Of a stretch of 64,000 bases of DNA, positions 18,058 to 61,257 are shown one piece after another. The stretch's first letter is position 1, and every line of letters begins with the position of its first letter. Position numbers and translations under genes: made by a program. Under the pieces are notes generated by a model. The model was not told where the DNA came from and did no database searches. It was given only the letters and a program-made list of their open reading frames with translations. Location: positions 1-64,000 of IMG/VR virus record IMGVR_UViG_3300030673_000004; one strand, given 5' to 3'.

Positions 18058-18110
18058 ATTTACTACAAAATTCTAAAAAAACAAGAGGTCATGTACAAAA
18101 AACCGTAAAT
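18058..18110. promoter_or_regulatory. divergent pair of GTAAAT promoter elements
   Basis: ATTTAC 18058-18063 facing pncB; GTAAAT 18105-18110, 7 nt before the helicase ATG at 18118. Confidence 0.55.
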
Positions 18111-18117
18111 CGTGAGC

Positions 18118-19764
18118 ATGGAGCAAGAAAAACCTATCGCATATCTGGACTACCGACTGTTTGTACCAACAAAAGCGGTTAACCAAGATATGATGGATGC
18201 CTTTGAAGACATCATCCCTGACTTCTTTTCACCTGTTGATGAAAACGGAGATCTTCGAGATAACCGAGACCTAAGACTTATCCACTACAAAAAGCATGAT
18301 GAGGGTTGGGTATCTTTTTCGCGAGGTGATCTTGCAAAGATCAAAGACATCATTTTCCCCTACGTCAGCATCTCGGACTGTCGCGCCGTTCGCCCGCTAG
18401 CACTGCAGCCAAAATGGCTTGGAGTTAAAAAAGATAATGGTGAACTTGTTCCTCTGTATGATAATCAGATAGAAACAATCGCAAGAACTCTCCACACGGG
18501 GTATGGACAACTACAAGCACCACCTAGATATGGTAAGACTGTATGTATGTCTAACATGATAACGCAATTGCAACAGAAAACACTGGTTCTTGCACATCAA
18601 GTAGAATTGTTGATACAATTTGAAGAACGCTTCCGTGCTTGTACAAATATAGAAGAGCTTGAACGCAAAGCAGGTCACAGACTTGTTGGCATATGTGACA
18701 AGATGGAAGAATTTGATCAATATCTTGTTTGTGCTGCTACCTGGCAAGGATTCTTAGCCGGAAATGCGAATCATAGTTTACTGCCAAAGTTGAAAGACTC
18801 CTTTGGTTGTGTTATGGTTGATGAAGCACACAGAGCAGCATCTGAATGTTTCTCAAAAGTTGTAGCACAATTCAACCCACGCTTCAGGTTTGGCTTTACA
18901 GCAACGCCTGAAAGAAAAGATGGTCTAGAGGCAGTTGTCAATAACATCATCGGGCCTGTAGTTGCATCCGGCGACGTACCCCAACTACCAATGAGAATCC
19001 GCCCAGTTTATACCGGATTCAAACCTGTATTTGAGCGCTGGTATGCATATGAACGACAAATACGAGATGCGAGCCCACGAAACAAACTTATTCTAAAACT
19101 CGTAGTAGATGATGTAAACAAGGGGCACTCTGTTCTTATTGTATGCACACGTAAAGAACATATAAAGAACCTAGTTGATACATTAAATCGCAAGTTCAAC
19201 GTGCCCGCTGAGGGTTGGTACTCTGATGTCAAAGATAGGTCCGGTGTTTTAGGCCGAGCTAAAGCAGGAGCTACAAAAGTCATTGTCGCAATGAGATCCA
19301 TGCTCCTCGGTCTAAATGTACCACGTTGGAGCAGTATTCATATTGTTGTTCCCAGTAACAACCCCTTCAATTTCTATCAAGAATTCGCACGTGTACGTAC
19401 ACCAAACGAAGGAAAAAAGTATTGTGTTATCCGGGATTATATTGATAACCACAAAGCTGCCATAACCTGCTTTAAGACACGCTTTGGTGTATATACTAAT
19501 CCAATGTATGCACCAGCATATTTTGAAGATGAGCATGGAAATCTAGTAAACCCACCAACAATGAGGATGATACAAGAACTTGCAAAAAGAGATCCAGATG
19601 AAATAAATCTAGAATCCATACCTAATGAAGCACGACGTGCCAGAAACATTTTTCAAAGCAAACCAACCTATGATGATACACCTAAGGAAGACATCGCACC
19701 TCTGGGATTAAGTAAGTTTGAAAAAATCAAAGCACACAAAACAGCTCTCGGAAATGACCTCTGA
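18118..19764 (+). CDS. SF2 DExH helicase (UvsW/Rad25-like)
   Basis: APPRYGKT, VDEAH, GFTATP, QEFARV. Confidence 0.85.
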   Translation: MEQEKPIAYLDYRLFVPTKAVNQDMMDAFEDIIPDFFSPVDENGDLRDNRDLRLIHYKKHDEGWVSFSRGDLAKIKDIIFPYVSISDCRAVRPLALQPKWLGVKKDNGELVPLYDNQIETIARTLHTGYGQLQAPPRYGKTVCMSNMITQLQQKTLVLAHQVELLIQFEERFRACTNIEELERKAGHRLVGICDKMEEFDQYLVCAATWQGFLAGNANHSLLPKLKDSFGCVMVDEAHRAASECFSKVVAQFNPRFRFGFTATPERKDGLEAVVNNIIGPVVASGDVPQLPMRIRPVYTGFKPVFERWYAYERQIRDASPRNKLILKLVVDDVNKGHSVLIVCTRKEHIKNLVDTLNRKFNVPAEGWYSDVKDRSGVLGRAKAGATKVIVAMRSMLLGLNVPRWSSIHIVVPSNNPFNFYQEFARVRTPNEGKKYCVIRDYIDNHKAAITCFKTRFGVYTNPMYAPAYFEDEHGNLVNPPTMRMIQELAKRDPDEINLESIPNEARRARNIFQSKPTYDDTPKEDIAPLGLSKFEKIKAHKTALGNDL

Positions 19765-20447
19765 TGCCTAGACAGCAATCTATATCACCAATAGACTTAC
19801 CAACAGCACCAAAGATGGTGAGTCAACCATCCCCAGATGAACGAAGGACTAACCTAGAGCCACCAATCCAATTTGGACAAATGCTCGGTAAAGTAGCCGC
19901 TCAATCACTGGATGAAACAATTTGTTCAGATCCTATCATCCAAAATGCAAACCACACAGCAGATACTATACCACTATCCAGCGAACTAGAACAACGCATT
20001 CTATATTATGCAATAAGAACATTAGAACTATCAAAAGGTCAGTTTGACTTCAAAGTGAACTTTAGATTTGAAAACCCAAGACAAGATCTAGCTAATGCCG
20101 CAGAGGGTGTTCTTTATGTGCAAGGATATCGAGATAGATTATGTGAGATAGAAATCCAACTACGCCAAGCTAGAAAACAGCTTGACTCAGCTTATGATAC
20201 AGGCGTAGCATACCTATTTGAACACTATCCTCAAAAAATGGATACATTTAATAGAGATAGCCTCTTACGAAATATATTTATAAGTAAGGTATTCAAACCA
20301 CTAGATGAAAAACGAAAAGATATCAAATCTCTACTAGAACAAGTAGCTAGTGCTTTAGATAACTTAGATAAAGCACATTTTGCTTACAAGACAGTTGTTG
20401 ATGTAGGTAAAACAATACTAGATAGAGTAGAAGGACGCGCAGGATGA
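19764..20447 (+). CDS. helical hypothetical protein
   Basis: TGATG coupling to the helicase; coiled-coil-like. Confidence 0.65.
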   Translation: MPRQQSISPIDLPTAPKMVSQPSPDERRTNLEPPIQFGQMLGKVAAQSLDETICSDPIIQNANHTADTIPLSSELEQRILYYAIRTLELSKGQFDFKVNFRFENPRQDLANAAEGVLYVQGYRDRLCEIEIQLRQARKQLDSAYDTGVAYLFEHYPQKMDTFNRDSLLRNIFISKVFKPLDEKRKDIKSLLEQVASALDNLDKAHFAYKTVVDVGKTILDRVEGRAG

Positions 20448-21184
20448 CTGATAACCCAAACCAAGCACCAAAAGATCTTCCAAAAAAGACAGAGGCCGAA
20501 GAAGTCAATGATGTACAGTCCATTCTGGATAGAATGGCCCGCTTACCTGCGGGTGGTCTGCACAAAGATACTATCCCCAATGACCTACCAGAAGATTCAG
20601 CATTCTCTAAAATGGTGCAGCACTGGAAATTCATTCAACGGGATTGGGCCAGAAAACATCATGGGGATGTTGAAGAATCTGCCGTGGTACAACCAGAGCC
20701 GGATGTTGAACTCTTCCATAAACTCAGTATCTCGCTACTAAACCACATTGAACGCCAAGCCGCTATTCGATATGCCGCCCTGGATGCAGGATTCAACATC
20801 ATACGACGAGGCGTCCAAGCCGACCTCGATATCAGACACTTAAATAAGTATCTAGATGAGTTAGAAGGTCTACGTCTATCAGGAGAGCTAATATCACTAT
20901 TTGATCTCCATGAATATAAAAATGAAATAATGCTTCGAGAGATTGATCGTGTATTCGGAACAGCAACATCTCTTGAATCAGAGCATCGCAAAAAAGAATC
21001 TGATGATAATCAGTATAGACAAGATATGCTGGACTTAGCGGTACAGACAGCGCAGGGTGTAAAAGATATGGGTGCTACACTGAGAAATTCTACTGGACCG
21101 TCTCCGCGAAGAGGACAAACCTCTTTAAGAAAGCGGAGGCACGATGGCCAGCAGTCAGAACCCGACGGGGACGCCAACAGTTAA
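20444..21184 (+). CDS. hypothetical protein
   Basis: ATGA overlap, 246 aa. Confidence 0.65.
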   Translation: MTDNPNQAPKDLPKKTEAEEVNDVQSILDRMARLPAGGLHKDTIPNDLPEDSAFSKMVQHWKFIQRDWARKHHGDVEESAVVQPEPDVELFHKLSISLLNHIERQAAIRYAALDAGFNIIRRGVQADLDIRHLNKYLDELEGLRLSGELISLFDLHEYKNEIMLREIDRVFGTATSLESEHRKKESDDNQYRQDMLDLAVQTAQGVKDMGATLRNSTGPSPRRGQTSLRKRRHDGQQSEPDGDANS

Positions 21185-26679: not shown

Positions 26680-26688
26680 GGCTACATC

Positions 26689-27461: not shown

Positions 27462-27519
27462 AACCAAAACTAAGAACAACTTATGAACAAAATATAAACA
27501 TAACTGTAAATCAAGAAAC

Positions 27520-29495: not shown

Positions 29496-29541
29496 GCTAA
29501 AGACCTAGAAGTTCTACCCAGCTCTCGTGTAAATGAGAAGG

Positions 29542-31596: not shown

Positions 31597-32811
31597 ATGC
31601 CTACACAAAGACGCACAAAAGCCGCAGTAGCCACCCAGCCAGTTGAAGTACCAACTATTCCAAACACGGTATGCTTTGCTCTAGAGCAGGCTAAGAGCCA
31701 GCTAGAGACACTAAAAAAGCTCACAGAGATAGTACCTAAAGGAACGGGTGAAACAGACGCGCCCGCCTGGATTCAAACAACAGAAACAGGTATTCGTGTC
31801 ACTTATGGTCATTTCGGTTACGGAGGCTACGTTGACATACCCGCAACAGTATCTGATATACAACTCAATCACAGTTTACCCTTACAGGTATTAACAAATC
31901 TGCAAAATGCGGATATTGTTAAACTTAGTCTAATCCAAGACGGGACAGCCCTAGCAGTCATGTCGGAAAGAACTCGATTAAACACACTACTAGATGATGC
32001 TGAAATTGTTCAACGACAAATTCCAGATTTCCTAGAAGACTGCTATGAATCATTCCGTCTAACAGATGCGCAATTTTCAGGTCTACTACGGCAAATTGTA
32101 TTCAAATCAACAGACTTATCAGTACGAGGCACAGGCTTACCTGTACAAATACGCTCGGATAGAACTAATAACTGCTACCATGTGATAGCACGTGACTCAG
32201 CTTTTGGTATTATAAAAACATTTAGTGCGGAGATTACCAATGATGTTGATGTAACTCTGACGCACCAGTTTCTTAAAGTCGTATCAGACACGCTCAAGAG
32301 CACAGATACAGTAGTATTCAGCTTCAGTGAAGATATGACATCCTGCAAAGCTAGTATTGGTGATCATACAGTTGTTTGGGTACCTGTACCTATTTATGAA
32401 GAATACGATTTGCTCACTTGGCACCAACAAACATTAGCAGAAGGTGCAGTGCTAGCAGAATTCAATGTATCATTCAATGCTTGGTTAGATGCCTTAGCTG
32501 ATATGATACCACATTTTAAGATTGATAGTCAAACAAACAATATCACCATCTCCTTTGATACAACTGTAACGCCACCAGAGATGCGCATGGTCTTTTCTAG
32601 CACACGAATAGCGGTAGCTGGTAGAGTACCTTATCAAACTGTGGTAGAATGCCATGAAGAAGACATTGTTACAGATGGTTTACGTATGTACTCTTTCCTA
32701 AAATGTGGAAAACAAACACGAGACCAATTAGCTAATACTAAACTAATTGGTAATCATATGTTTGTAAATATACCTGAAGCAAACTTGGATTTCATTCTAC
32801 CATTAAGGTAA
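31597..32811 (+). CDS. putative beta sliding clamp-like protein
   Basis: About 400 aa with a repeated alpha/beta pattern, next to dnaB, with a DnaX gene in the window; highly divergent. Confidence 0.5.
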   Translation: MPTQRRTKAAVATQPVEVPTIPNTVCFALEQAKSQLETLKKLTEIVPKGTGETDAPAWIQTTETGIRVTYGHFGYGGYVDIPATVSDIQLNHSLPLQVLTNLQNADIVKLSLIQDGTALAVMSERTRLNTLLDDAEIVQRQIPDFLEDCYESFRLTDAQFSGLLRQIVFKSTDLSVRGTGLPVQIRSDRTNNCYHVIARDSAFGIIKTFSAEITNDVDVTLTHQFLKVVSDTLKSTDTVVFSFSEDMTSCKASIGDHTVVWVPVPIYEEYDLLTWHQQTLAEGAVLAEFNVSFNAWLDALADMIPHFKIDSQTNNITISFDTTVTPPEMRMVFSSTRIAVAGRVPYQTVVECHEEDIVTDGLRMYSFLKCGKQTRDQLANTKLIGNHMFVNIPEANLDFILPLR

Positions 32812-32814: not shown

Positions 32815-33183
32815 ATGCCTGATATTCAAACAACAAAAACTGTGGAATTTTCTTTGGACTCCAATATCCAAGGAACTTTCCAGGGACCTAAGTTCCGAAT
32901 GCTCCGTGAACCTGGGCATGTAGTTGTCTATTATGATTCATCTATATACACCCCTAGATGCATAGGTGATTCAGGTATTATCCTCTATGACAAGAATGCT
33001 CAGTACAAAACAAACTTTGATGTTGTTTCTAAAAGTGACTCTCAGATTCTATATCACAGAGATAATGTTATGATATGTGCTACAGAACAACGCACAGAAG
33101 ATCTACAAGCAGTATATTATGTAATTATGGCAGACAAATTTACACCTATAAATAATCTATATGTAAATACGGAGTCTCGCTAA
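32815..33183 (+). CDS. hypothetical protein
   Basis: ORF within the operon. Confidence 0.55.
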   Translation: MPDIQTTKTVEFSLDSNIQGTFQGPKFRMLREPGHVVVYYDSSIYTPRCIGDSGIILYDKNAQYKTNFDVVSKSDSQILYHRDNVMICATEQRTEDLQAVYYVIMADKFTPINNLYVNTESR

Positions 33184-33184: not shown

Positions 33185-33766
33185 ATGAGATCAATTGCAT
33201 TTATGGGGCCATCCCGTGGAGGTAAGTCCTCTATCGCTAAAGAAATTGCCAGACAACTAGATCCCAATGTTTACGGAAACATTGGGATGCTATCCTTTGC
33301 GGACACATTAAGAGAAATAGCAAGTACACGCTTTGGGTGGACAGGTGAAAAGACCCCAAAGCAACGAGACATAATCCAAAAAGCCTCAGAATCCTGGAAA
33401 CGACAACACGGTGAAGATATCTTTGCAATAGACTTACTGGTCCGTGCAAAATGTAAACCAGCTTGCTACGATACTATTATAATTGATGATCTGAGACATG
33501 GCTGCGAACTAGGAGCCCTACGCAATAACACACAGGCAACAATACTGTGTATAGATGAAGAGCAAGCGGAACACGTCTGGGCTCAGGCATTCAGCGCACA
33601 TAAAACAGTAGATGATGAATTCTCATGGGCGGTACATAGGTCAGAGCTAGAATGGCGAGGCTTTCGACATTTGTACCAACATATAAATAATGATAAAACT
33701 TCGCCATATGGTTTTGACATATCTGTAAATAAAATCATGCAGATCTTACATCAGGGAGATAACTAA
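33185..33766 (+). CDS. deoxynucleoside monophosphate kinase-like P-loop kinase
   Basis: GPSRGGKS, SFADTLR, IIDDLRH, HRSE. Confidence 0.75.
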   Translation: MRSIAFMGPSRGGKSSIAKEIARQLDPNVYGNIGMLSFADTLREIASTRFGWTGEKTPKQRDIIQKASESWKRQHGEDIFAIDLLVRAKCKPACYDTIIIDDLRHGCELGALRNNTQATILCIDEEQAEHVWAQAFSAHKTVDDEFSWAVHRSELEWRGFRHLYQHINNDKTSPYGFDISVNKIMQILHQGDN

Positions 33767-34881
33767 TGCCGGAAGACATGCTAAACATTGGAGACTTTGA
33801 CGACATCCTAGCAGATGCTCCGGTCCAAGAAGCTCCTATTGAGGACACCGCACCACATGCCCTAAAAATAGGCTTCATCGGTGCAGGACAAGCTGGATGC
33901 AATCTAGCTAATACGTTCTGGGATACCTGTGGATATCGTCGTGTTATTCTGTTTAATACTACAGGAAACGATGTCCGTGGTTCTGCTGTCCCAGAAGATC
34001 TTCAAGTGATTGCAGAAGGATTTGATGGGGCTGGTAAAAATCGAGATGTTGGACAGAGAGCAGCCGAACAAAGTGCAACAAAGCTGCTTGCAACCATGTC
34101 TAAGCGGTTTGGTTCGGACACAGACTACATCATCGTCCTGGCATCTGGTGGCGGTGGAACAGGGTCTGGGGCGGCTGTAAAACTAGCCGAATACGGGCGT
34201 CAATATCTATGCTCCAAAGGACTTTCGCCGGAAGAAGCAGTTAAAAGAGTTGGTTTTATCATCATGCTGCCTACAGATTCAGAAGGATCCGTATCCAAAA
34301 GTAATGCCCTCTCGCTAGTAAATGATGTAACCACATTTGGTGGTTCACCCGTAATGTACATTGATAATGGACGAGTTTCATCACTTGTCAAGAGTACACT
34401 GGGCGGGTGGTACTCACAAGCAAACACCATGATTGCACGCCTATTTGATATGTTCAACTTCCTAGCAAGCAAGGATTCCAGTCGGCAAGCTTTTGACCCC
34501 CAAGATTATCGAACGGTTCTATCGTCGGGTTTGGTAAGTGTTGGGCTCACACGCCTAAACAGATACACTAACGACATGGATCTAGCTAATGCCCTACAGC
34601 AGAATCTTAAAACAAGTTTGCTTGTTGATGATGTTGGCTTGTCTTCCGGGACTCATGCAGCTATTATAGTCCTAGGTGATGATGCTACACTTAATGAGAT
34701 TCCTATGACAGCACTAGATAATGTACGAACGGTCATCTCATCTCTTCTAGGATCTGGTCCAAGTAAACCTGTTACCATTCATACCGGTATCTATGCAAAC
34801 AAGTCACCTGTTATTCAAGTATTCTCTATGCTGGGTGGCCTAAGTTTTCCAGCATCCAAACGAAGGAAATTAGGGGGTTGA
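33766..34881 (+). CDS. tubulin/FtsZ-family GTPase (PhuZ/TubZ-like)
   Basis: GFIGAGQAGCN, FNT, DGAGKN, GGGTGSG signature, IDN. Confidence 0.88.
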   Translation: MPEDMLNIGDFDDILADAPVQEAPIEDTAPHALKIGFIGAGQAGCNLANTFWDTCGYRRVILFNTTGNDVRGSAVPEDLQVIAEGFDGAGKNRDVGQRAAEQSATKLLATMSKRFGSDTDYIIVLASGGGGTGSGAAVKLAEYGRQYLCSKGLSPEEAVKRVGFIIMLPTDSEGSVSKSNALSLVNDVTTFGGSPVMYIDNGRVSSLVKSTLGGWYSQANTMIARLFDMFNFLASKDSSRQAFDPQDYRTVLSSGLVSVGLTRLNRYTNDMDLANALQQNLKTSLLVDDVGLSSGTHAAIIVLGDDATLNEIPMTALDNVRTVISSLLGSGPSKPVTIHTGIYANKSPVIQVFSMLGGLSFPASKRRKLGG

Positions 34882-36545: not shown

Positions 36546-38264
36546 TCAAGTATCTATGCTAGAAAGTTTCTTCTGGATACAATTTTCTGCTAAGGCCCGA
36601 GTAGCATTACTAGAATGATCTACATAGGGAAACAACCAAGGGAGGTATTTACTGACCAAAGCCGCCACCTCACAGGTAATAGTTCGATATGAAATATGAC
36701 CAGAGGGCTGAGATCTAAGTTCTGTTAAATAGACTAGCTGCCGAAGTGAACATGTATATGTCCAAAGCACAGGATGACCAAGCAATCTTAAATAAGCAGA
36801 AGAATTCGATTGACGAGGAACGTCACTTTTTAAGCAAGCAGAATATTCTGCATTTTTAAGACCTGTAAGGGCACTAACAGCATTACGACACAGTACTTGT
36901 AATGACATAGGCATCTCATCAAACCCAGGAAATTCAATCACACCAACAGAGTCTAAGAAGCTTACTATATCCTGTTTGCCTGCCCGATGACGCTGCAAAT
37001 CACGATAAGCACCGTAATCCATGAGCACATCAAGTGTCACATGAATATGATCTAAGTACCGGGGAACATCCTTATGATAATCAGTGCGAACATTTTTGTA
37101 ATGCTCTTCTGCAACAGCTAAAATATTATCAAGCTCCGGCTCATCAGCACTAGAATGCAACTGAACGAGATTAGTACTTAAACTATCTGTAATGCCACAA
37201 ATAGGTCTAAAATAGCCAGGAACAGATCGCTTAGCATAGAAAGCAATAAATGAAGCAGCAGTACGTTGGCGCAAATCCTTTGGAAGCGTAACTTGCACAG
37301 TAGCTCCAACAGAAGAACACTTGGAAGTCAACACAAGGGCATGTTCTAAGTCTTCAACTTGGCCTAAAGAGGTACGCCTAGGTTCTGGCCAGAAACACCC
37401 AGACGTTTCAATAGGATCAAATCCATCAAACGAAGTATCAGGTCCGACATGCGTAAACAAACCAGGATTAATCTTAAATACTTCGAATAGCAGATCCTCG
37501 GCCAAAGAACGAACTTCGCTAAGAGGATGTGCAAGTAGTCTAGAGATTAATCTAGATGTCTCACGTGTTGGGATAGTAGCACCAAAGGAAGTCTTAACAC
37601 ACACAGGGAGATAATAGCGAGCCTTATCAAACGCCTGAGCTTTTGTTGTTCTACGACGAGCCGCGTCATTAACAAACTGTGCTGGATCTGACTCCTGAAA
37701 ATGTCGATCAGACCAATAAGCAAGCAGTTGCTCATAAGCAGTAAACACTTGAGTAAACACATCACGATATTTAGGCAGTAAACAACCTGCCGAGTCAAAA
37801 CAGTTGAGAGGCAGAGCCAAGTCATCAACAGATGCTACACTAAAGGGCAGATATCGTGTGGATTTCTCCTGATAGGCACCAAGCTCCGAATCTTCAAATG
37901 CTTTAGCTGCCAAAATAGAACAGCCCTCAATAGCAAAACGATCTATAGAAGAGTCTTTTAATGAGTTATGCCCATACTCAACTGCCCACTTACGCAAAAA
38001 AGATTCCGCCTTACCCAGAGCATGACCCAGGTAAGCAGAATTAGAATCACGTATTGCAGTAGCAAATTCAGACACAGTTAAACCGGAGTCTCTAAATAAA
38101 GACACCAACAACCGCTGCCTTATTGGCTCATGAGAACGAGAATAGGAACCAACAAGGTATGCCCACAGAGATGATGGCATATTATCAGTAGCACAAGCAA
38201 CACGACTATCAGTAGTTGTGAAAAAGTAAAGAACAACAGTCTGCTCATCTTCTGTAAAGATCAT
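36546..38264 (-). CDS. thyX: flavin-dependent thymidylate synthase, long two-domain form
   Basis: YGHNS, YQEKSTRY, ARYYLP, YRDLQRHR, ELRSQPSGHISYR. Confidence 0.85.
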   Translation of the reverse strand: MIFTEDEQTVVLYFFTTTDSRVACATDNMPSSLWAYLVGSYSRSHEPIRQRLLVSLFRDSGLTVSEFATAIRDSNSAYLGHALGKAESFLRKWAVEYGHNSLKDSSIDRFAIEGCSILAAKAFEDSELGAYQEKSTRYLPFSVASVDDLALPLNCFDSAGCLLPKYRDVFTQVFTAYEQLLAYWSDRHFQESDPAQFVNDAARRRTTKAQAFDKARYYLPVCVKTSFGATIPTRETSRLISRLLAHPLSEVRSLAEDLLFEVFKINPGLFTHVGPDTSFDGFDPIETSGCFWPEPRRTSLGQVEDLEHALVLTSKCSSVGATVQVTLPKDLRQRTAASFIAFYAKRSVPGYFRPICGITDSLSTNLVQLHSSADEPELDNILAVAEEHYKNVRTDYHKDVPRYLDHIHVTLDVLMDYGAYRDLQRHRAGKQDIVSFLDSVGVIEFPGFDEMPMSLQVLCRNAVSALTGLKNAEYSACLKSDVPRQSNSSAYLRLLGHPVLWTYTCSLRQLVYLTELRSQPSGHISYRTITCEVAALVSKYLPWLFPYVDHSSNATRALAENCIQKKLSSIDT

Positions 38265-38280: not shown

Positions 38281-38305
38281 AAAAAGGCAAGAGTTTCCTC
38301 TTGCC
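38281..38305 (-). terminator. intrinsic terminator
   Basis: GGCAAGAG-GAAA-CTCTTGCC-TTTTT on the minus strand. Confidence 0.7.
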
Positions 38306-38331
38306 CTATTTACAAGTTTGAGAGTTATGTA

Positions 38332-44265: not shown

Positions 44266-46887
44266 TTACCCGGCCTCAACAATGTTAGAGTCATCAAGCA
44301 CAGGCTCAGGAAGTCGTCCCTCCGCACGATCAATCATCTCCTGCTCAATCTCAAAAGCAAACCCGGAACGTATCTGGCGAAGACAATGCTTCCAAAGCCC
44401 CTGCTTATTTTCCGGCGCTTCAATGATGTTCTTCAACGTCATATAAGGCATTGCGGAATCAACAAAATTAGTACCAAAAATAGAAGGCTTTGGGGCATCG
44501 GGAGCGACACCACGAACTTCCAACTTGTACTTTCCGTTGGATGCCTTAAGCAACTGACCTGTGGCATCCAAGTACTGAAGCACATCATATGTCTGATCAA
44601 TACCATCGCCAGGATGTCCTTCATGCTCCATACGGATACGAATAGCCCCCTCACGATAGGGTGTATACATCTTATTCTTAGTATTTTTCAACTTTGAATA
44701 TGTGTACTTATCTGTACCACCGTTAATAGAAGGCTCTTCATTGTAAGTAGCACCACCTTCAGTACGCTTAGCACCAGCAGTACTCGGAGATACCCTACGA
44801 ACCTGAAAACGAGCATCTGTGTAAAACTTAAGAGCCTCACCTCCGGGCTCAACTTCCGGACTGTTATGCACAATAAAACCATTACATGGATTACCTGCCA
44901 TGTAATTGTGATTATCTTCCACAGTAATGTCGTACTTGGTCCGCAACCTAAACATCCGAGCAGACCCACGAGTAATAGAAAGAACAGGAACATCTACATG
45001 AGTATATTCCGGTGTAGACGATAATACGTAATCATGAAATCTTCCTTGATATGCGGCTGGTAGTTTATACCACATACACGCAGGAACATAGGAAACAATC
45101 AAATCAAAAAATTTATACACAGCAGCAGCGGTAATAACAAAAGAACCCCCATGGCGAACAACGTGCTCAATCCCGTAACGAGCAAAAACAGAAGAGAGAG
45201 CAGCCAACTCATCGGGACAATTACGAAAACGCTTAGCCGAAATTGTTATTCTGTACGACCCGGACGAACGAAGAGCCAAATTACCGTCATCCATGTACCA
45301 AACAGCTAAACTAAGTGCGGTCATACGAGAAGCAACATGAAGAGCACTACGAGTGTGCCCAGATTGTTTTGATGCTTTTACCCAGCACCCAAGCTCGTAA
45401 GTAGAGTTTGATACGTAACTAACACGACCACAACTATCAATACGCCTGAAAGAGAAATAAGGTGACAGCAAAGACATTTTCCACTGCAGATACTTATCAT
45501 TCTCAGAATCAGCCAAGCGAAAGAAGCCGTTACTGGACCGAGCATCCTGCTGCAAAGCAATATCACCAACGGACATACCAGCAAACAACTCTAACAAAGT
45601 ACCATTAAACTGAGACAGATACTGTGTCCTAACAAGATCACCAACCTTGATATCTTCGGCAGGCACCCACGTACCATTCGCAAATATCTCATGATTTGGT
45701 GTAACGGTAACACCAGCAACGCCGTTTGGTGTATCAATTGCGGCTGTCTTAATACTCACCCAATCGTCTGGAGAATTAACAACACCATTATTGTGCCAAC
45801 TTACAATGCTTTTAGGCTCTAAAGTACCAGTAGTTTCGTTTAGAGACCACACCTGACCGGTAATACGCTGTTCTACAATCTCACGCATGGTAAAAGATCG
45901 GCCATCTACAAAGGGAATCTTAACATCAGAATGAAGACAACCCATCGCCATAGGCTTCATGCGGATCTGATTATTACCCAAAAGAGTACACCGGCGACTA
46001 GTAAGTGCCGCTTTAACCTTCTTCAGGTTATCCGAGAACATTCGTGCTTGAATACCAATAGCACCACTCTTATCACCCTTTTCCTGCAAACTTTCTTGTA
46101 CAAGTTCAGGTAGCATTGCAGGAAAAGAATCAATCAAGAACAGATACTGAGGAGCACCAGCCGCAGCCGATTCTGCCCACTGGCCTTCAGGAACACGCTC
46201 CCACCACTGCCCATTAGGGTCCTGCTTGATCTCAGGCAGAGCTAGCAGAATACCAGCTATTGCATTGAATATATCTTCCCCAATATGGTGATTAGTGTAT
46301 CTAACCATAGGAAGAATGTCCCAATGCTTGCCATCTTTGGAACGTCGTCCTTGGATATCAAGTAGAGACATATCAAAACGATTGAAAATACGCTCTGCAT
46401 AAGTTGGATCTCGGGCAGACTCCGGGTCAAACCAATAAACAGGGATGTTTGAATTAACAAACCAAGGAACAAGGGTGTTAAACAGTGTGGATTTTCCAGA
46501 CTGCTCAGGTCCAGCATTACTAATGAATTTACCAATAGGTAGACCACCACCCATAGCAAAGTCATAACTCAAGCACCCCGTAGGAACACTATCTTCAATG
46601 TATCCACCAATATTATGCTGCTGCGCAAAAAAGTCCAACCGCTTCTCAATAGCGTCAACATTATCCTGCAGTTCGTGAAACTGCTTAGTCATCATAATTG
46701 ATGGCAATAAAATACGACCAGATTTAACAGAAGCAGGAATACCAGGAGCTTCAATTTCACCCTCAGTAGCTACGGGGATTTCGGTAATATCAATAGATGG
46801 ATCAGCATCTAGCCAAGCAAGAGCTGGACGAACTAACTGTTCACTAGGAACAATAGTATCTTGTTTTGGTGTAGCTTTACGCGGCAT
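44266..46887 (-). CDS. recA: RecA/UvsX recombinase with intein
   Basis: GPEQSGKST, LIDS, QARMFS, NQIR, GGEALKFY, KNK. Confidence 0.9.
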   Translation of the reverse strand: MPRKATPKQDTIVPSEQLVRPALAWLDADPSIDITEIPVATEGEIEAPGIPASVKSGRILLPSIMMTKQFHELQDNVDAIEKRLDFFAQQHNIGGYIEDSVPTGCLSYDFAMGGGLPIGKFISNAGPEQSGKSTLFNTLVPWFVNSNIPVYWFDPESARDPTYAERIFNRFDMSLLDIQGRRSKDGKHWDILPMVRYTNHHIGEDIFNAIAGILLALPEIKQDPNGQWWERVPEGQWAESAAAGAPQYLFLIDSFPAMLPELVQESLQEKGDKSGAIGIQARMFSDNLKKVKAALTSRRCTLLGNNQIRMKPMAMGCLHSDVKIPFVDGRSFTMREIVEQRITGQVWSLNETTGTLEPKSIVSWHNNGVVNSPDDWVSIKTAAIDTPNGVAGVTVTPNHEIFANGTWVPAEDIKVGDLVRTQYLSQFNGTLLELFAGMSVGDIALQQDARSSNGFFRLADSENDKYLQWKMSLLSPYFSFRRIDSCGRVSYVSNSTYELGCWVKASKQSGHTRSALHVASRMTALSLAVWYMDDGNLALRSSGSYRITISAKRFRNCPDELAALSSVFARYGIEHVVRHGGSFVITAAAVYKFFDLIVSYVPACMWYKLPAAYQGRFHDYVLSSTPEYTHVDVPVLSITRGSARMFRLRTKYDITVEDNHNYMAGNPCNGFIVHNSPEVEPGGEALKFYTDARFQVRRVSPSTAGAKRTEGGATYNEEPSINGGTDKYTYSKLKNTKNKMYTPYREGAIRIRMEHEGHPGDGIDQTYDVLQYLDATGQLLKASNGKYKLEVRGVAPDAPKPSIFGTNFVDSAMPYMTLKNIIEAPENKQGLWKHCLRQIRSGFAFEIEQEMIDRAEGRLPEPVLDDSNIVEAG
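44863..45939 (-). mobile_element. 359-aa intein with LAGLIDADG-type endonuclease in RecA
   Basis: MAMG|CLHSD ... TPNH ... GMSVGD, LAVWYMDDG ... IVHN|SPE. Confidence 0.9.
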
Positions 46888-48940: not shown

Positions 48941-50098
48941 TCAAAAACCAGATGTCTCAGGACGACGACCCTGCGGCGGCTGCGGCACAGGGAAATCACT
49001 ATCAGACATAAAAGAGGGCAAAGACGCGCCACCAAAAGCAGATGCACCCGAATCACCACCGAAAGTAGGCACAGAAGACTGTGCGTCACCAAAAGTAGGT
49101 ACGGATGCATTCTCATGACCAAAAGCTGGAACAGAATCATCTGCACCAAATGTCGCAATTGAAGCTGCCGGGGTGCGCTGTGAGGGTACAGACGACGGAG
49201 GTGCATCAAAACCAGCCGTTGGGATAGATGAAGGAAGAGAACCAGCAGAAGCCCCACTAAAACTACCACCAAAACCACCATCAGATGGATTCTGATGCTG
49301 AATGCCTATATTAGTGTCTCGGAGCAACTCCGGATACTTCCAGAAAGCCAAAGAGCGCGAAATGTCAGCAGGATCCTGAAGACTTTCGCGATAAATCTCC
49401 TCCAGTGGCTTAATGCTGCTAGAAACAAAGTTACGCATATCTTGGGGCAAGGGAAAAGCATTACCACGCTGAACCGTATACATCTTAGCCGGAATAGCAC
49501 TAGGGTTATACTTTACAATGATGGTACCGCCATTATCGTAATCCGCAATGTCTACCATCTTATTCCCAGTAGCATCTGTCATAATGTCAAGCGCTTCTTG
49601 CAAACCCTCAGCAACAGTTTTAGGAAACCGAAAAACCTTCAGTTCCGGCACCCACTGTTGGGTCTTAGGATTTTTATACAAGCACCAAGCAAAATACTGC
49701 AGACGATCCTTTACATAGTCATAGTAAGTACCACAGCAATCACAAGAATGCACACCTGTCTCAGGGTTTGGATACGACTTCTCGTCAATAAAATCAAAAT
49801 CGGGACAGACAACATCAAAAGCTTTTGCATTCTGTGGAATAGCTGCGGGTGCCTTATCAACTTGACGATCACGATTATGCCAACGCTTAAGCTCACGAGC
49901 ATGATCAAGAGCCAAGTATACAGTATGCAGCTTATGACAAAACGGTGAACCTACAGGACGAATTTCTACAGGCAAACCCGGAAAATCATGAAGAGCAAGA
50001 ATAGGCAACTGGGCATCCCAGCGAGGCTTAGCTGTCTGCTTGGGAGCCATGCCAGAAAATGTCTTTACACGGGGGGATGAGTTGGATGAAGAGTACAT
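48941..50098 (-). CDS. putative gp32-like single-stranded DNA-binding protein
   Basis: His/Cys metal ligands (HTVY, CPD, CDCC), DIADYDNG..IIV, long acidic G/S/F tail; recombination gene neighbourhood. Confidence 0.6.
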   Translation of the reverse strand: MYSSSNSSPRVKTFSGMAPKQTAKPRWDAQLPILALHDFPGLPVEIRPVGSPFCHKLHTVYLALDHARELKRWHNRDRQVDKAPAAIPQNAKAFDVVCPDFDFIDEKSYPNPETGVHSCDCCGTYYDYVKDRLQYFAWCLYKNPKTQQWVPELKVFRFPKTVAEGLQEALDIMTDATGNKMVDIADYDNGGTIIVKYNPSAIPAKMYTVQRGNAFPLPQDMRNFVSSSIKPLEEIYRESLQDPADISRSLAFWKYPELLRDTNIGIQHQNPSDGGFGGSFSGASAGSLPSSIPTAGFDAPPSSVPSQRTPAASIATFGADDSVPAFGHENASVPTFGDAQSSVPTFGGDSGASAFGGASLPSFMSDSDFPVPQPPQGRRPETSGF

Positions 50099-50108
50099 GA
50101 GAACCTCG

Positions 50109-50147
50109 ATGAGTTAGAATGGGTTAGAATGAGTTAGAATGAAGTAG
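50109..50147. repeat. 10-bp tandem repeats upstream of the SSB gene
   Basis: GAGTTAGAAT GGGTTAGAAT GAGTTAGAAT GAAGTAG. Confidence 0.8.
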
Positions 50148-50240
50148 AGATACGTTTTGTTGTACTCCCGAGGGAGTACACAAAGAAGTTCTTCCACTGA
50201 CTCAAGATTTACAGCACACAACCCAAATTCTCAAAATTCT

Positions 50241-51413
50241 TCAGCCAAGGACGAAAGAAAGCTGCCGAAATGTCTCATACTCAAGATCCTCGGGATCTAT
50301 ACACAACTTATCAACAGGAATAGACTCATAATCATAAAACAGGAACAAAACCAACCGCTCCATAGCTGTAAGTTCTGCAGTATAATGAGCTAACTGCTGC
50401 GACATATCAACAGTTTCTCTATCCTGCTCCAGAGCCACATCAGTGTAAGCCTCAGGCTCATCACCTTCTTCATCCAGATCATCAATCAAAGATGCAACAT
50501 TCTGCATGTCATGTAGAGCAACAGCATTCTCCACTAGACGTATGTCTACACCCTCAAGCATACTTATCTCGTCTAATGTCGCGTTAGGGTTCTTCTTACG
50601 ACGCCGATCAACAGCAACACGCAGCTTATACATACGATCAGGTATACGGATGAATGAATTACTCTGCTTAATAGAGTAAATCATCCTGTTATTGACCCAC
50701 ATGTTAACCTGACTAGCAAAAGAACCGTACTCTGAGTCATACTTGCTTAAAGCTATAGCTACACCTTCATACCCATGCTGGTAGTGATCCATGAATACTT
50801 CAGGCTCTCTAGAGAAAGATCTAGCTAACGTACCAACACGACGCAAAAAAGGTACAGACACACGGCGCTCAATATCTTTTATACGAGGCCAGTTAGCTTT
50901 AAGGCTATTCAGTATTCCCCATATACGATGATATGCTACCGAGGAGGAAACCCCAAAGAGTAATAACTTAACAGGAACACGATCATCTAAAGGAATATCA
51001 GACTGAGCTGAAACTTGAAATTCCAACTGAGGTATCTGATCGTACAAATCCGATAAAACACTCAACCAGTACGCACGATAAACGCGAGTATACCGCCTAA
51101 CAGCGTACAGCCAGTCAGGCTCACCGATAGCATGAACAAAACTACATAAGTAAACGTCGTTTACTGTAGAAAATGTCTTTTTTGTACCTTTACGGTATGC
51201 ATGATACACCAAATTAAGATAAAAAGACCGCACTAAAGAACACTCAGCATCAATCACAGCTAAGCTATCATAAATAAGGTCATCCATCAAGTTAACTAAG
51301 TAAGCAGCATCAGCATTATCTAAAAGACAAAACTTAAAACTCTCATTAAGAGTATCCGTAGCCTGAGCAAAAGACCTGTCATTGACATTATTAGAAGTCA
51401 AATAATCAGACAT
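50241..51413 (-). CDS. RpoD-like sigma70-family sigma factor
   Basis: LRRVGTLARSF, DHYQHGYEGVAIALSKYD, FASQVNMWV, FIRIP. Confidence 0.8.
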   Translation of the reverse strand: MSDYLTSNNVNDRSFAQATDTLNESFKFCLLDNADAAYLVNLMDDLIYDSLAVIDAECSLVRSFYLNLVYHAYRKGTKKTFSTVNDVYLCSFVHAIGEPDWLYAVRRYTRVYRAYWLSVLSDLYDQIPQLEFQVSAQSDIPLDDRVPVKLLLFGVSSSVAYHRIWGILNSLKANWPRIKDIERRVSVPFLRRVGTLARSFSREPEVFMDHYQHGYEGVAIALSKYDSEYGSFASQVNMWVNNRMIYSIKQSNSFIRIPDRMYKLRVAVDRRRKKNPNATLDEISMLEGVDIRLVENAVALHDMQNVASLIDDLDEEGDEPEAYTDVALEQDRETVDMSQQLAHYTAELTAMERLVLFLFYDYESIPVDKLCIDPEDLEYETFRQLSFVLG

Positions 51414-51452: not shown

Positions 51453-51476
51453 ATTTACACAATAAAAACAGTAAAT
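51453..51476. promoter_or_regulatory. divergent pair of GTAAAT elements
   Basis: ATTTAC 51453-51458 and GTAAAT 51471-51476 between divergent genes. Confidence 0.55.
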
Positions 51477-51525
51477 AAACATATAAGTAACATTTTATGA
51501 ACAATCTATCAACAAGAGCTGACAC

Positions 51526-53014: not shown

Positions 53015-53056
53015 AACGCACCTCCAACTTAAATATACATTACATTTGTATACATG

Positions 53057-55459: not shown

Positions 55460-55468
55460 GTGAAATCC

Positions 55469-58003: not shown

Positions 58004-58007
58004 ATCC

Positions 58008-59973: not shown

Positions 59974-59975
59974 CG

Positions 59976-60164
59976 TTATTTAACCACCTTATAGTCAGGA
60001 GACCACTTATGCACAAAAACTATACCTTTAGTAGTTAGCTTCAAGGCCCCATCCGCATCAGGACAAAGTAAACCCTTACGCTGAGCATCTACAGCATAGT
60101 CCGTATCACCTGTGGTTAAAAAACGCACAAGATCAGAAGCAAGATCGCAATTTACGTGTGCCAA
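59976..60164 (-). CDS. small hypothetical protein
   Basis: ORF fills a gap in the operon. Confidence 0.45.
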   Translation of the reverse strand: MAHVNCDLASDLVRFLTTGDTDYAVDAQRKGLLCPDADGALKLTTKGIVFVHKWSPDYKVVK

Positions 60165-60167
60165 GTC

Positions 60168-61211
60168 TTATTCTTTCGAGTACTTAGAAAGTATAGTATT
60201 GATAGTATCCAAACTATTTTGCTTCTGCTGTTCCAAAGAAGCAAGATGAGCCAACTCATCGTCAAGATGAGTTCTATCTAAAGGATTTACCGTAACAGGT
60301 AAGAAAATGCGTAAAGCCTCAGAAAGAATAGTAGCAGGAGACGCCGCCTTATACGTTTTTGTACTAAGCACAACAGCAGGTACCGGATCCGTCCTGAGTA
60401 AGGAAGACTGAGAGCAAAACCAGTAAATATTGTTGTTTCGAGACTTGAACAACACCTGTAGAGGAGCATCAAAACAAGGATGATACATAGTAACATCAGA
60501 AAGTTTAACACAGTACAAACCAGAAAACGGCTTGTTAGCAACTAAACACAAAAAACAAGGCTCAGAAGGAGCACCAGAAACGAGACCAAAAGCATTAAGA
60601 GCAGCAACCACATAGGCGGTGGGAAACGTTAGGCAATCCACAGAAGCAGACAAAACGCCCTCCCCTAAACCCAGACTGGAAGCGGACACGCTGGTAGTGG
60701 AACAAACACAACCGCCGCCCTTCTTTCCGCTTACAGGATAAAACTCAGCTTCAGAGCTAAAGCAATATATACCAGAGGGCACATGATTAATACCAGGATT
60801 AATCTCATTCTTGTATGGAACATAAGTCTCTGTTGAATACAACGATTCAATACTAGCTTCCGATAAATCATCACAAGCACCAAAGGTACCATCAGGTGCC
60901 ATAAAAGCAGGAGCAGAAGGCACGTCTAAACCAGTATCAGACCCAGATAAAGAACCAAGATCTGCGATAGAAAATCCAGAAAATAAACTACTCTGAATTC
61001 GCTCCAATGCAGCAGCCTCTTCCTCAGAGGGCGGTGGCAATCTAAACGCCTCAGGTGTCTCTGCCAGAGGAAGATCTAAAATATGAGCCAAAGGAACACC
61101 CCCAGCAAATGGAGGTGGTGCATCTGTAGCTACGTCAGAAGATGTATCTAAGGTAGTACTCACAGCAGATAGTAAACTGTCAAGGCGCTGAGCCAACTTG
61201 TCTTGGGACAT
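60168..61211 (-). CDS. hypothetical protein
   Basis: 347 aa; ATG 7 nt after GTAAAT. Confidence 0.6.
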   Translation of the reverse strand: MSQDKLAQRLDSLLSAVSTTLDTSSDVATDAPPPFAGGVPLAHILDLPLAETPEAFRLPPPSEEEAAALERIQSSLFSGFSIADLGSLSGSDTGLDVPSAPAFMAPDGTFGACDDLSEASIESLYSTETYVPYKNEINPGINHVPSGIYCFSSEAEFYPVSGKKGGGCVCSTTSVSASSLGLGEGVLSASVDCLTFPTAYVVAALNAFGLVSGAPSEPCFLCLVANKPFSGLYCVKLSDVTMYHPCFDAPLQVLFKSRNNNIYWFCSQSSLLRTDPVPAVVLSTKTYKAASPATILSEALRIFLPVTVNPLDRTHLDDELAHLASLEQQKQNSLDTINTILSKYSKE

Positions 61212-61257
61212 AGCTGAAATTTACAGCAAACAGGGCAAACTGTCAGTAGAAATAAAC

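What the first reader, a model, noticed from the sequence alone, without database searches (positions are those of the whole stretch)
18058..61224. Second promoter class: a GTAAAT -10-only element, probably read by a phage sigma factor
Seen: GTAAAT lies on the coding strand shortly upstream of many genes: 18058(-), 18105(+), 27506(+), 29529(+), 32764(+), 33163(+), 33725(+), 38308(-), 50207(-), 51453(-), 51471(+), 61219(-). Back-to-back pairs occur at two divergent junctions (18058/18105 and 51453/51471). In four cases a start codon follows 7-8 nt later. I see no shared -35. Inference: a middle/late promoter analogous to T4 TATAAATA, read by one of the two phage sigma factors. The hexamer also occurs by chance, so enrichment needs a formal test.
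Basis: partly seen in the sequence, partly recalled or inferred. Interest (0 to 1): 0.62.

Follow-up and report, generated by a model that had tools for sequence, protein, structure and literature searches.

The report
Jumbo-phage GTAAAT promoter class
GTAAAT is a real, conserved, strand-specific signal in front of the replication-type genes of an uncultured 375-kb phage; it is most likely the only recognition element of a phage-specific promoter, and it sits so close to some start codons that those messages would have no leader.

Summary
All 12 listed GTAAAT sites exist. The hexamer is not enriched in bulk: the window has 42 copies against 40.7 expected. It is strongly enriched by position.

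- **Position.** In sense-oriented upstream regions the window has 9 copies against 1.2 expected, rank 1 of all hexamers. The rest of the 375.5-kb genome has 36 against 7.5.
- **Stringency.** No single-base variant is specifically enriched, and there is no -35 element.
- **Spacing.** An ATG lies exactly 7 nt downstream 15 times against about 4 expected. About 17 long ORFs start 7-9 nt after the hexamer with no room for a ribosome-binding site.
- **Conservation.** Ten of the 12 sites keep the hexamer in related metagenomic phages while the flanks diverge. Sites 33163 and 51471 do not.

The genes served are a helicase, resolvase, primase, exonuclease, ThyX, a tubulin, NAD salvage genes and the 390-aa sigma factor. 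This is a middle (replication) class, not a late class.

No phage RNA polymerase was detected. Three sigma-like genes exist.

Best reading: a -10-only promoter read by host core polymerase with a phage sigma factor. Which sigma reads it is not settled. No RNA data exist. It resembles the T4 late and phiEco32 gp36 promoters in function but is not homologous to either system.

The parts
18058..18063 (-). GTAAAT, 48 nt upstream of the NAPRTase gene (16717-18009). This is the first gene of the NAD-salvage operon that runs down to the 196-aa sigma gene.
   Evidence: Intergenic and sense-oriented. Retained in relative L041. A Shine-Dalgarno sequence lies before the ATG. NAPRTase by Pfam.
18105..18110 (+). 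GTAAAT exactly 7 nt before the ATG (18118) of a DEAD/ResIII helicase. Predicted leaderless.
   Evidence: The longest possible ORF begins at 18112, so there is no room for a Shine-Dalgarno sequence. L041 keeps GTAAAT-N7-ATG, and its independent gene call starts at that ATG.
27506..27511 (+). GTAAAT 8 nt before the ATG (27520) of a Holliday-junction-resolvase-like protein.
   Evidence: The hexamer is kept in L043 (N11) and L044 (N7, where the gene call starts there).
29529..29534 (+). GTAAAT followed 7 nt later by a GTG (29542) that is conserved in three genomes. The ATG overlapping the motif is not conserved.
   Evidence: In-frame amino-acid conservation begins right after the N7 GTG.
32764..32769 (+). 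GTAAAT inside the last 50 nt of gene 31597-32811, 45 nt upstream of the next gene (32815).
   Evidence: The codons GTA AAT are kept in L043 and L044 while neighbouring synonymous positions change. Weaker evidence than for the intergenic sites.
33725..33730 (+). GTAAAT 35 nt upstream of the tubulin/PhuZ-like gene (33766-34881), inside the end of the preceding gene.
   Evidence: Kept 31 and 41 nt upstream of the tubulin gene in L043 and L044. Tubulin by Pfam.
38308..38313 (-). GTAAAT 43 nt upstream of the ThyX-domain gene (36546-38264). It is followed 2 nt later by a hairpin plus T-run (38281-38305).
   Evidence: In a three-genome alignment the hexamer is the only conserved block upstream. The hairpin arms differ but stay complementary. 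ThyX by Pfam.
50207..50212 (-). GTAAAT about 108 nt upstream of gene 48941-50098. ACTTCT (50184-50189), a hairpin and three CATTCTAAC repeats follow.
   Evidence: In the four-genome alignment A2, GTAAATC and ACTTCT are invariant islands.
51453..51458 (-). GTAAAT 39 nt upstream of the 390-aa sigma factor gene.
   Evidence: Present 40-45 nt upstream of the sigma gene in L013, L015 and L017, whose sigma proteins are 78, 68 and 60 % identical.
61219..61224 (-). GTAAAT 7 nt before the ATG (61211) of a 347-aa protein next to the clamp-loader gene. Predicted leaderless, and preceded by a terminator-like hairpin with a T-run.
   Evidence: L013 has N7 and L015 has N8, and their gene calls start at that ATG.
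33163..33168 (+). Probably a chance Val-Asn codon pair.
   Evidence: Relatives read GTGAAC and GTGAAT at the aligned position.
51471..51476 (+). Doubtful.
   Evidence: Absent from the orthologous intergenic region of L013, L015 and L017.
50241..51413 (-). 390-aa sigma-70-family protein. It is a candidate reader of GTAAAT and is itself a product of a GTAAAT promoter.
   Evidence: Sigma70_r2 hit. Residues 183-357 align to RpoS 93-276. Group-3-like hits (FliA/WhiG, SigB/F/G) over 190-363. phrog_351.
11817..12407 (-). 196-aa two-domain (region 2 plus region 4) sigma factor. It is a candidate reader of GTAAAT.
   Evidence: TIGR02937 at 50 bits, over cut-off. Sigma70_r4 hit. Upstream lies a conserved TTGnTT-N17-TATATA element, then 5-8 nt and the ATG, with no Shine-Dalgarno sequence.

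Best explanation
GTAAAT (extended form tGTAAATa) is the sole sequence-specific element of a phage-specific promoter class. This peat/freshwater jumbo phage has about 45 functional copies.

**Geometry (inferred).** The hexamer acts as a -10-type element occupying about -13 to -8, which puts its T and first A at the canonical -12 and -11 positions. Transcription would start 7-8 nt after the hexamer. Where the start codon sits at that point (about 17 genes) the mRNA is leaderless. Elsewhere a 15-130-nt leader carrying a Shine-Dalgarno sequence follows.

**Genes served (shown).** The class serves replication, recombination and nucleotide-metabolism genes, genes interspersed among the tRNAs, and the 390-aa sigma gene. 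It is therefore a middle class.

**Reader (inferred).** My split for the identity of that sigma is:
- the 196-aa two-domain sigma, made early: about 0.4;
- the 390-aa sigma, which would then be self-activating: about 0.25;
- the weak 216-aa sigma-like protein or a modified host holoenzyme: the rest.

**What is shown and what is inferred.** Shown: enrichment, orientation, fixed spacing, stringency, conservation and gene content. Inferred: the transcription start, the sigma dependence and the cascade.
For: **Positional enrichment.** Window 9 against 1.17 expected (rank 1 of all hexamers). Rest of genome 36 against 7.5. Within 60 nt of gene starts 35 against 6.8, the top hexamer.

**Orientation bias**.

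**Stringency.** No single-mismatch variant is enriched except GTATAT, which belongs to the other promoter class.

**Spacing.** ATG at offset 7 occurs 15 times against a mean of 4.0 at other offsets (p = 2e-5). Those ORFs are long and have no upstream room for a Shine-Dalgarno sequence. Distal sites are followed by a Shine-Dalgarno sequence in 25 of 27 cases.

**Conservation.** Ten of 12 listed sites are kept in relatives whose proteins are 53-82 % identical, as islands in diverged intergenic DNA. Site 33163 serves as an internal control, because there the same codon pair drifts.

**Divergent junction.** The 108-bp junction at 18010-18117 must hold two promoters. The helicase side has no sigma-70-like match but has GTAAAT-N7-ATG.

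**Context.** Several sites lie directly after terminator-like hairpins.

**Functions of the genes served**.

**No phage polymerase.** No RNA polymerase domains were found and no DxDGD motif occurs in any ORF. Sigma genes are present.

**Cascade logic.** The 196-aa sigma has a conserved sigma-70-type promoter, whereas the 390-aa sigma has a conserved GTAAAT.

**Precedent.** phiEco32 gp36 promoters have one conserved element, with starts 6-8 bp downstream (PMC8948821).
Against: - No transcript 5' ends exist: no RNA run holds this phage.
- A 6-bp word occurs about 185 more times in the genome outside upstream regions, so the hexamer alone cannot be sufficient. No second determinant was found.
- The base after the hexamer, which would be -7, is not conserved. 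This is unlike sigma-70-type -10 elements.
- Both well-supported sigma proteins seem to have region 4 or part of it, yet no -35 element exists.
- Gene starts come from my own simple gene caller, which favours Shine-Dalgarno starts.
- Antisense depletion inside genes (56 against 111) is shared by TTTTAC, so it is not specific evidence.
- A weak sigma-70-like match (TGTACA-16-TAGAAT) lies just upstream of site 18058.
Confidence: 0.72

Rival explanations
1. GTAAAT is a weak -10-type element used by the host housekeeping sigma holoenzyme, perhaps modified or helped by a phage factor. No phage sigma factor would be involved.
For: With the start codon as +1, the hexamer places T and A at -12 and -11. 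The phage clearly uses host sigma-70-type promoters elsewhere. A T often precedes the G.
Against: There is no -35, no conserved -7 T, and the TG is not at the extended -10 position. All six bases are near-invariant, and ATAAAT is barely enriched. This is unlike degenerate housekeeping -10 elements. The strong early promoters of the same phage use TATATT with a full TTGACA.
Confidence: 0.1
2. GTAAAT is an RNA-level signal: a cleavage or processing site for a phage or host endoribonuclease. Cleavage would create leaderless or short-leader mRNAs and separate tRNAs from downstream messages.
For: The spacing to start codons is fixed. Five copies begin 5-8 nt after the 3' end of a tRNA.
Against: The sites sit after terminator-like hairpins and in a divergent junction where no upstream transcript is expected. 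Distances to Shine-Dalgarno-led genes vary from 15 to 130 nt. No conserved RNA structure surrounds the hexamer.
Confidence: 0.07
3. GTAAAT is the binding site of a phage DNA-binding regulator, either an activator or sigma appropriator of the T4 MotA type or a repressor. It would not be the element contacted by sigma.
For: It is a very stringent short word without a -35, as with the MotA box that replaces the -35 in T4 middle promoters (own knowledge). The genes served are of the middle class.
Against: A box at about -30 needs a -10 element some 12 nt downstream. Here the start codon is only 7 nt downstream in about 17 cases, and nothing is conserved downstream of the hexamer. The word is not palindromic or repeated.
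Confidence: 0.07
4. Chance or compositional artefact, since intergenic DNA is AT-rich.
For: The bulk count equals the shuffle expectation. Two listed sites are not conserved.
Against: It ranks 1-2 of 4096 hexamers in upstream regions, in both the window and the independent remainder of the genome. Same-composition permutations have a median of 16 against 44 for GTAAAT. Orientation bias, the N7 peak and cross-genome conservation also argue against chance.
Confidence: 0.02

Closest known systems
T4 late promoters (TATAAATA at -10, read by gp55 with gp33 and the gp45 clamp). Own knowledge.
   Same: A single, very stringent A/T-rich element at -10 with no -35. The extended form tGTAAATa matches at 7 of 8 positions. 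Host core polymerase is redirected by a phage sigma-like protein.
   Different: The G is obligatory: ATAAAT is barely enriched (20 against 11.8). No gp55 homologue is detectable. The class serves replication genes, not virion genes. Many transcripts are predicted to be leaderless.
phiEco32 gp36-dependent middle/late promoters (single element tAATGTAtA, starts 6-8 bp downstream; PMC8948821)
   Same: One conserved element, no -35, and a start a fixed 6-8 bp downstream. A phage sigma factor works on host core polymerase, and the sigma gene itself is a middle gene.
   Different: The word is different. Neither sigma gives any tblastn match to GenBank phages. gp36 lacks region 4, whereas the 196-aa sigma here has it. 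The phiEco32 9-mer is embedded in this phage's sigma-70-type early promoters.
Sigma cascades of large phages such as SPO1 (gp28, then gp33/34). Own knowledge; PMC13401047 appeared only as a title and abstract in a search list.
   Same: Early genes are read by the host sigma. An early-made phage sigma turns on middle genes, and these include the next sigma factor.
   Different: SPO1 promoters are bipartite. Here both phage-specific motifs are single elements, and the cascade is inferred only from which promoter precedes which sigma gene.
ECF sigma promoters, e.g. E. coli sigma-E (-35 GGAACTT, -10 GTC; PMC6648896)
   Same: The 196-aa sigma is a two-domain, ECF-like protein. GTAAAT begins with GT, like the ECF -10 element. 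The third motif aACTTCTt resembles the sigma-E -35 element.
   Different: No AAC-type -35 lies 16-17 nt upstream of GTAAAT. ACTTCT lies only 4 nt from validated start codons, so it cannot be a -35.
Leaderless-gene promoters of Actinobacteria and Deinococcus (-10 at a fixed distance from the start codon). Own knowledge; PMC4633059 appeared only as a title in a search list.
   Same: A -10-type element about 7 nt from the start codon, and no Shine-Dalgarno sequence.
   Different: Here this applies to a minority of genes in a phage that otherwise uses strong Shine-Dalgarno sites. One conserved case starts with GTG.

Membership tests
Sigma-70-family -10 promoter element | Enriched upstream of genes and strand-specific | tested here: met
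   45 against 8.7 in sense upstream regions. Orientation 28:12 on the + side and 7:0 on the - side.
Sigma-70-family -10 promoter element | Transcription starts 6-9 nt downstream of the element | not testable with these tools
   No RNA run holds the phage. There is indirect support only: an N7-N8 spacing to the start codons of ORFs that lack a Shine-Dalgarno sequence.
Sigma-70-family -10 promoter element | Conserved T at -12, A at -11 and T at -7 | tested here: inconclusive
   If the ATG is +1, T and A fall at -12 and -11. The -7 position shows no preference: A14 C6 G8 T12.
T4-type late transcription | TATAAATA element | tested here: not met
   The element is GTAAAT. ATAAAT is not significantly enriched.
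T4-type late transcription | gp55 homologue encoded | tested here: not met
   T4 gp55 finds nothing in the genome at E <= 1. hhalign against the 196-aa sigma gives probability 0.05 %. PHROG hits are to generic sigma families. Very remote homology cannot be excluded.
T4-type late transcription | Drives virion (late) genes | tested here: not met
   The downstream genes are a helicase, resolvase, exonuclease, primase, ThyX, a tubulin, NAD salvage genes and a sigma factor.
phiEco32 gp36-type single-element promoters | One conserved element, no -35 | tested here: met
   Logo.
phiEco32 gp36-type single-element promoters | Sigma factor homologous to gp36 and lacking region 4 | tested here: not met
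   No tblastn match to any GenBank phage. The 196-aa sigma has a region 4 hit. The 390-aa sigma aligns into region 4.1.
ECF-type promoter | AAC-containing -35 element 16-17 nt upstream of the -10 | tested here: not met
   No information content upstream of the hexamer beyond a weak T at -1.
Leaderless-mRNA promoter arrangement | Start codon 6-9 nt after the -10 element and no Shine-Dalgarno sequence | tested here: met
   15 copies of N7-ATG against 4.0 expected. 18 ORFs of 80 aa or more lie at N7-N9, one of them inside another gene. Independent gene calls in relatives start at the same ATG.

The most novel reading that the evidence does not exclude
A 375-kb phage without its own RNA polymerase runs a three-step programme on host core enzyme.
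- Near-consensus sigma-70 promoters come first.
- Two different six-base, -10-only promoter classes (GTAAAT and aACTTCTt) follow, each read by a phage sigma factor that still has a region 4.
- Both phage-specific classes are placed so that dozens of genes, including one with a conserved GTG start, are expressed as leaderless mRNAs in a host that otherwise relies on Shine-Dalgarno sites.

That would be a new mode of single-element recognition by two-domain sigma factors. It would also be a deliberate use of leaderless translation by a phage.
Probability: 0.25. Interest if true: 0.65.

Novelty: new variant of a known kind. Interest (0 to 1): 0.45.

Why it matters
Promoters of uncultured jumbo phages are almost unknown.

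This work gives a compact, testable regulatory code for a whole clade found in peat and freshwater metagenomes. It has three promoter words, two or three sigma genes and a predicted cascade.

The code allows temporal classes to be assigned to hundreds of unannotated genes from sequence alone. It corrects gene starts that standard callers miss, because the genes have no ribosome-binding site. It also offers a very short orthogonal promoter and sigma pair for testing.

The predicted leaderless genes are a concrete case for asking how and why a phage uses leaderless translation.

Tried and rejected
- **RNA evidence.** The one run search found only DNA metagenomes from peat and freshwater, with no RNA. 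I therefore did not use read laying.
- **Relatives in GenBank phages.** None by megablast. Neither sigma gives a tblastn match. PolA is only 25-31 % identical to that of the Lu11 and Yoloswag group.
- **Relatives in IMG/VR.** None were found with the sigma protein or with its alignment. A scan with the 18-nt core of the early promoter returned ten unrelated AT-rich contigs with no shared proteins.
- **Structure models.** The AlphaFold models of both sigma factors were too poor to use (mean pLDDT 58 and 47). Foldseek gave only weak sigma-factor matches, best E = 3e-3. I draw no domain conclusions from them.
- **Motif avoidance inside genes.** Antisense copies occur at half the synonymous-shuffle expectation. 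TTTTAC is equally depleted, so I do not count this as evidence.
- **CTAAC leader motif.** It is not general across the genome.
- **Literature.** A search for GTAAAT as a phage promoter found nothing relevant.
- **T7-like polymerase.** The PF00940 search is uninformative because its controls did not ring. The 878-aa candidate turned out to be a GyrA/ParC-like protein carrying an intein.

Full report
**Setting.** The window is the first 64 kb of a 375,537-bp IMG/VR virus record with short terminal repeats. It uses the standard genetic code. It has no close relative among GenBank phages and comes from peat and freshwater metagenomes.

The window is a replication and nucleotide-metabolism module. 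It holds:
- PolA, a RecA-like protein and a GyrA/ParC-like protein, each carrying an intein;
- SbcC/Rad50-like and Mre11/SbcD-like proteins, a clamp loader and a DnaB-like helicase;
- a DEAD/ResIII helicase, a ThyX-domain protein and a tubulin-like protein;
- an NAD-salvage operon;
- two sigma-70-family genes.

**The observation.** In bulk the word is not enriched: the window has 42 copies against 40.7 +/- 5.8 in shuffles.

I built a simple gene map of the whole genome. It used codon-usage scoring, greedy selection and Shine-Dalgarno-aware start choice, plus 34 tRNAs from ARAGORN. I then asked where the word lies.

- Within 60 nt upstream of gene starts it is the most enriched of all hexamers: 35 genes against 6.8 expected, ahead of the Shine-Dalgarno words.
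- In sense-oriented intergenic stretches the window alone gives 9 against 1.17 (p = 4e-6, rank 1).
- Among the 60 words of the same base composition it is the top scorer: 44 against a median of 16.
- In co-directional intergenic regions the orientation is 28 sense to 12 antisense on the + side and 7 to 0 on the - side.

**Anatomy.** A logo of 40 intergenic copies shows no information outside the six bases, except a weak T before the G. The most enriched 8-mer containing the hexamer is TGTAAATA (13 against 1.1 expected). There is no -35-like signal at any spacing. None of the 18 single-base variants is enriched except GTATAT, which belongs to another motif. The word is therefore unusually stringent.

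The distance to the next ATG has one sharp peak: offset 7 occurs 15 times against a mean of 4.0 at other offsets (p = 2e-5). Eighteen ORFs of 80 aa or more begin 7-9 nt after the hexamer, and one of them lies inside another gene. For those I checked, the ORF cannot be extended upstream, so no ribosome-binding site fits.

The remaining copies lie 15-130 nt upstream of starts, and 25 of 27 of those starts have a Shine-Dalgarno-like word. My start choice favours such words, so that count is soft.

**Conservation.** The word search found relatives of three proteins: the 390-aa sigma (60-90 % identity), the 196-aa sigma (about 60 %) and a 404-aa protein (53-82 %). Their contigs are syntenic with the window.

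The hexamer is kept at the orthologous place for ten of the twelve listed sites:
- **18058 and 18105.** Both are kept, and 18105 retains N7-ATG. That junction is about 85 % identical overall, so this says little.
- **27506.** Kept at N8, N11 and N7 in the three genomes.
- **29529.** GTAAAT-N7-GTG is present in all three genomes. Amino-acid conservation starts right after the GTG, while the overlapping ATG is not conserved.
- **32764 and 33725.** Both lie inside the 3' end of the preceding gene. The GTA AAT codons are kept while neighbouring synonymous sites change.
- **38308, 50207, 51453 and 61219.** Here the hexamer is an invariant island in otherwise diverged intergenic DNA.

Site 33163 is a useful control. 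It is the same Val-Asn codon pair, yet relatives read GTGAAC and GTGAAT. Site 51471 is absent from all three relatives.

Independent gene calls in the relatives start at the N7 or N8 ATG. In one relative the genes behind two such sites were not called at all, as expected for genes without a ribosome-binding site.

**What it is.** The word is strand-specific and lies upstream of genes. It stands alone in a 108-bp divergent junction that must hold two promoters, where the helicase side has no sigma-70-like match. It often follows terminator-like hairpins. It also sits at a fixed 7 nt from the start codons of genes that have no leader.

These are the properties of a -10-type promoter element. With the A of the ATG as +1, the hexamer spans -13 to -8, which puts its T and first A at the canonical -12 and -11 positions (inference).

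At 38308 the hexamer is followed 2 nt later by a hairpin and T-run whose arms differ between genomes but stay complementary. A start 7 nt downstream would fall inside the 5' arm. Read-through transcripts would then terminate while transcripts initiated here would not (inference).

**Who reads it.** Pfam models for the two large RNA polymerase subunits find nothing. No ORF has a DxDGD catalytic motif. The T7-type search was uninformative because its controls did not ring. Host core polymerase is therefore the likely enzyme.

Three sigma-like genes exist:
- **196 aa (11817-12407, - strand).** A two-domain, ECF-like protein: TIGR02937 at 50 bits, plus a region 4 hit.
- **390 aa (50241-51413, - strand).** Residues 183-363 align with group 2/3 sigma factors from region 2 into region 4.1. 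It also has a 185-aa N-terminal extension of unknown function.
- **216 aa (genome 106576-107226).** A weak region-4-only match.

The genome has three upstream word families.
- **Early, sigma-70 type.** About 35 near-consensus copies of TTGACA-N17-TATATT, with an almost invariant spacer and a conserved leader.
- **GTAAAT.**
- **aACTTCTt.** A purine lies 4 nt after it, and it stands 4-8 nt before several start codons.

The 196-aa sigma gene and the 216-aa gene are each preceded by sigma-70-type hexamers. For the 196-aa gene the arrangement TTGnTT-N17-TATATA is conserved in a relative and lies 5-8 nt from the ATG. The 390-aa sigma gene is preceded by a conserved GTAAAT.

The simplest order is this: host sigma makes the small sigma factor, the small sigma reads GTAAAT, GTAAAT makes the 390-aa sigma, and that sigma reads the third class. 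This is inference from gene order only, and self-activation of the 390-aa sigma is not excluded.

GTAAAT begins with GT, as ECF -10 elements do; for sigma-E the -10 is GTC (PMC6648896). That is a lead, not a test.

**Temporal class.** The genes directly served are:
- a helicase, a resolvase-like protein, an SbcD-like exonuclease, an HNH endonuclease and a primase;
- a family-2 glycosyltransferase, ThyX, the tubulin-like protein, NAPRTase and the rest of the NAD operon, and the sigma gene.

Twenty-four of about 45 copies lie between 15 and 120 kb, in the replication module and the tRNA region. This is a middle class, not a late class.

The ACTTCT class precedes large proteins of unknown function, one with a head-tail-connector match, and also an IS607-like transposase. 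Its timing is open.

**Comparison.**
- **T4 late promoter.** In function GTAAAT is closest to TATAAATA (own knowledge). No gp55 homologue is detectable, the G is obligatory, and the genes served are not late.
- **phiEco32 gp36 promoters.** These have one conserved element with starts 6-8 bp downstream (PMC8948821). Neither sigma here matches any GenBank phage.

I file it as a new variant of a known kind.

**Weak points.**
- There are no transcript data.
- The hexamer occurs about 185 times elsewhere in the genome, so something else must help discrimination. I found nothing that does.
- Position -7 is not conserved.
- Both main sigma factors seem to keep at least part of region 4 without a matching -35.
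- The structure models were unusable.
- Depletion of the antisense word inside genes is shared by TTTTAC and is not specific.

**Verdict.** The promoter reading is well supported by statistics and comparative genomics. The sigma assignment and the transcription start remain predictions.

Noticed in passing
Window - strand at about 333, 3813, 7737, 8729, 9924, 36530 and 53041; about 35 copies genome-wide: Early promoter family: TTGACA, a 17-nt spacer that is almost invariant, and TATATT. A conserved leader that ends in AAGGAG often follows. The spacer plus -10 contains TAATGTATA, which is the single-element consensus of phiEco32 gp36 promoters (PMC8948821). Such spacer conservation is more than sigma-70 needs.
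   Followed up: partly
Window 4336(+), 1562(-) and 50184(-); genome 136296, 150218, 221407, 226704, 263338, 313950, 325792 and others: Third upstream word, aACTTCTt: 32 copies against 9.3 expected in upstream regions. It has no -35, and a purine lies 4 nt after it. It stands 4-8 nt before start codons, including that of the IS607-like transposase, whose start is confirmed by homology. It is invariant in four genomes 17 nt downstream of the GTAAAT at 50207. It may be a second phage-specific promoter class.
   Followed up: partly
Whole genome G000:C1: Extreme avoidance of six-base palindromes. There are zero copies of TTTAAA (206 expected), ATCGAT (115), CAGCTG, GTGCAC, GTCGAC, CTCGAG, ACGCGT, CGTACG, GACGTC and GGGCCC. 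There are one or two copies of five more. AATATT occurs 49 times against 206 expected. This looks like restriction-site avoidance.
   Followed up: partly
Window 12408-12450 (- strand) and L041:9960-10000: The 196-aa sigma gene has no Shine-Dalgarno sequence. A conserved TTGnTT-N17-TATATA ends 5-8 nt before its ATG, so this gene too may be leaderless, but from a sigma-70-type promoter.
   Followed up: partly
G000:C1:106576-107226 (L012:1231-1881): A third, weak sigma-like gene of 216 aa. It has a region-4-only match, a hit to the 'positive control sigma-like factor' family at E = 0.002, and a hit to phrog_1190. TTGACA-N17-TATTTT lies upstream.
   Followed up: partly
Window 50099-50206 (- strand); alignment A2: The leader of gene 48941-50098 holds a hairpin with compensatory changes between genomes. 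Three tandem CATTCTAAC-like repeats lie just before the Shine-Dalgarno sequence and are conserved in relatives.
   Followed up: no
Window 51459-51520 (- strand); alignment A1: TGTT / ATGTTA repeats at about 10-11 bp phasing lie upstream of the GTAAAT of the 390-aa sigma gene and are kept in four genomes. They may be a regulator binding site or bent DNA.
   Followed up: no
Window 39046-42447, 44266-46887 and 62227-64863 (all - strand): Inteins interrupt the PolA, RecA-like and GyrA/ParC-like genes, with HNH or LAGLIDADG endonuclease domains in the first two. Relatives carry the RecA-like and PolA genes with or without the intein, judging by protein length.
   Followed up: no
Window 33766-34881 (+): A tubulin/FtsZ-family (PhuZ/TubZ-like) gene in a phage that shows no phiKZ-type RNA polymerase.
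   Followed up: no
G000:C1:91533-117819: There are 34 tRNA genes, all on the + strand. GTAAAT begins 5-8 nt after the 3' end of a tRNA at five places (93465, 100408, 103035, 109408, 110882). It lies 10-18 nt before two tRNAs (104685, 108185). A tRNA-like 3' end before 96517 was not called by ARAGORN.
   Followed up: partly
Window 4346-6189 (+): An IS607-like pair sits among the early genes: a serine-recombinase transposase (phrog_6620, E = 4e-46) followed by a 425-aa ORF that I did not scan.
   Followed up: no
Whole window: AT skew is positive in all 32 of the 2-kb bins and GC skew is negative in 29 of them, whichever strand the genes are on.
   Followed up: no
It lies inside a gene, exactly 145 nt upstream of the DnaB-like helicase gene in all three genomes. 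Its flanks are also conserved, so a coding constraint cannot be separated from a signal.
   Followed up: no
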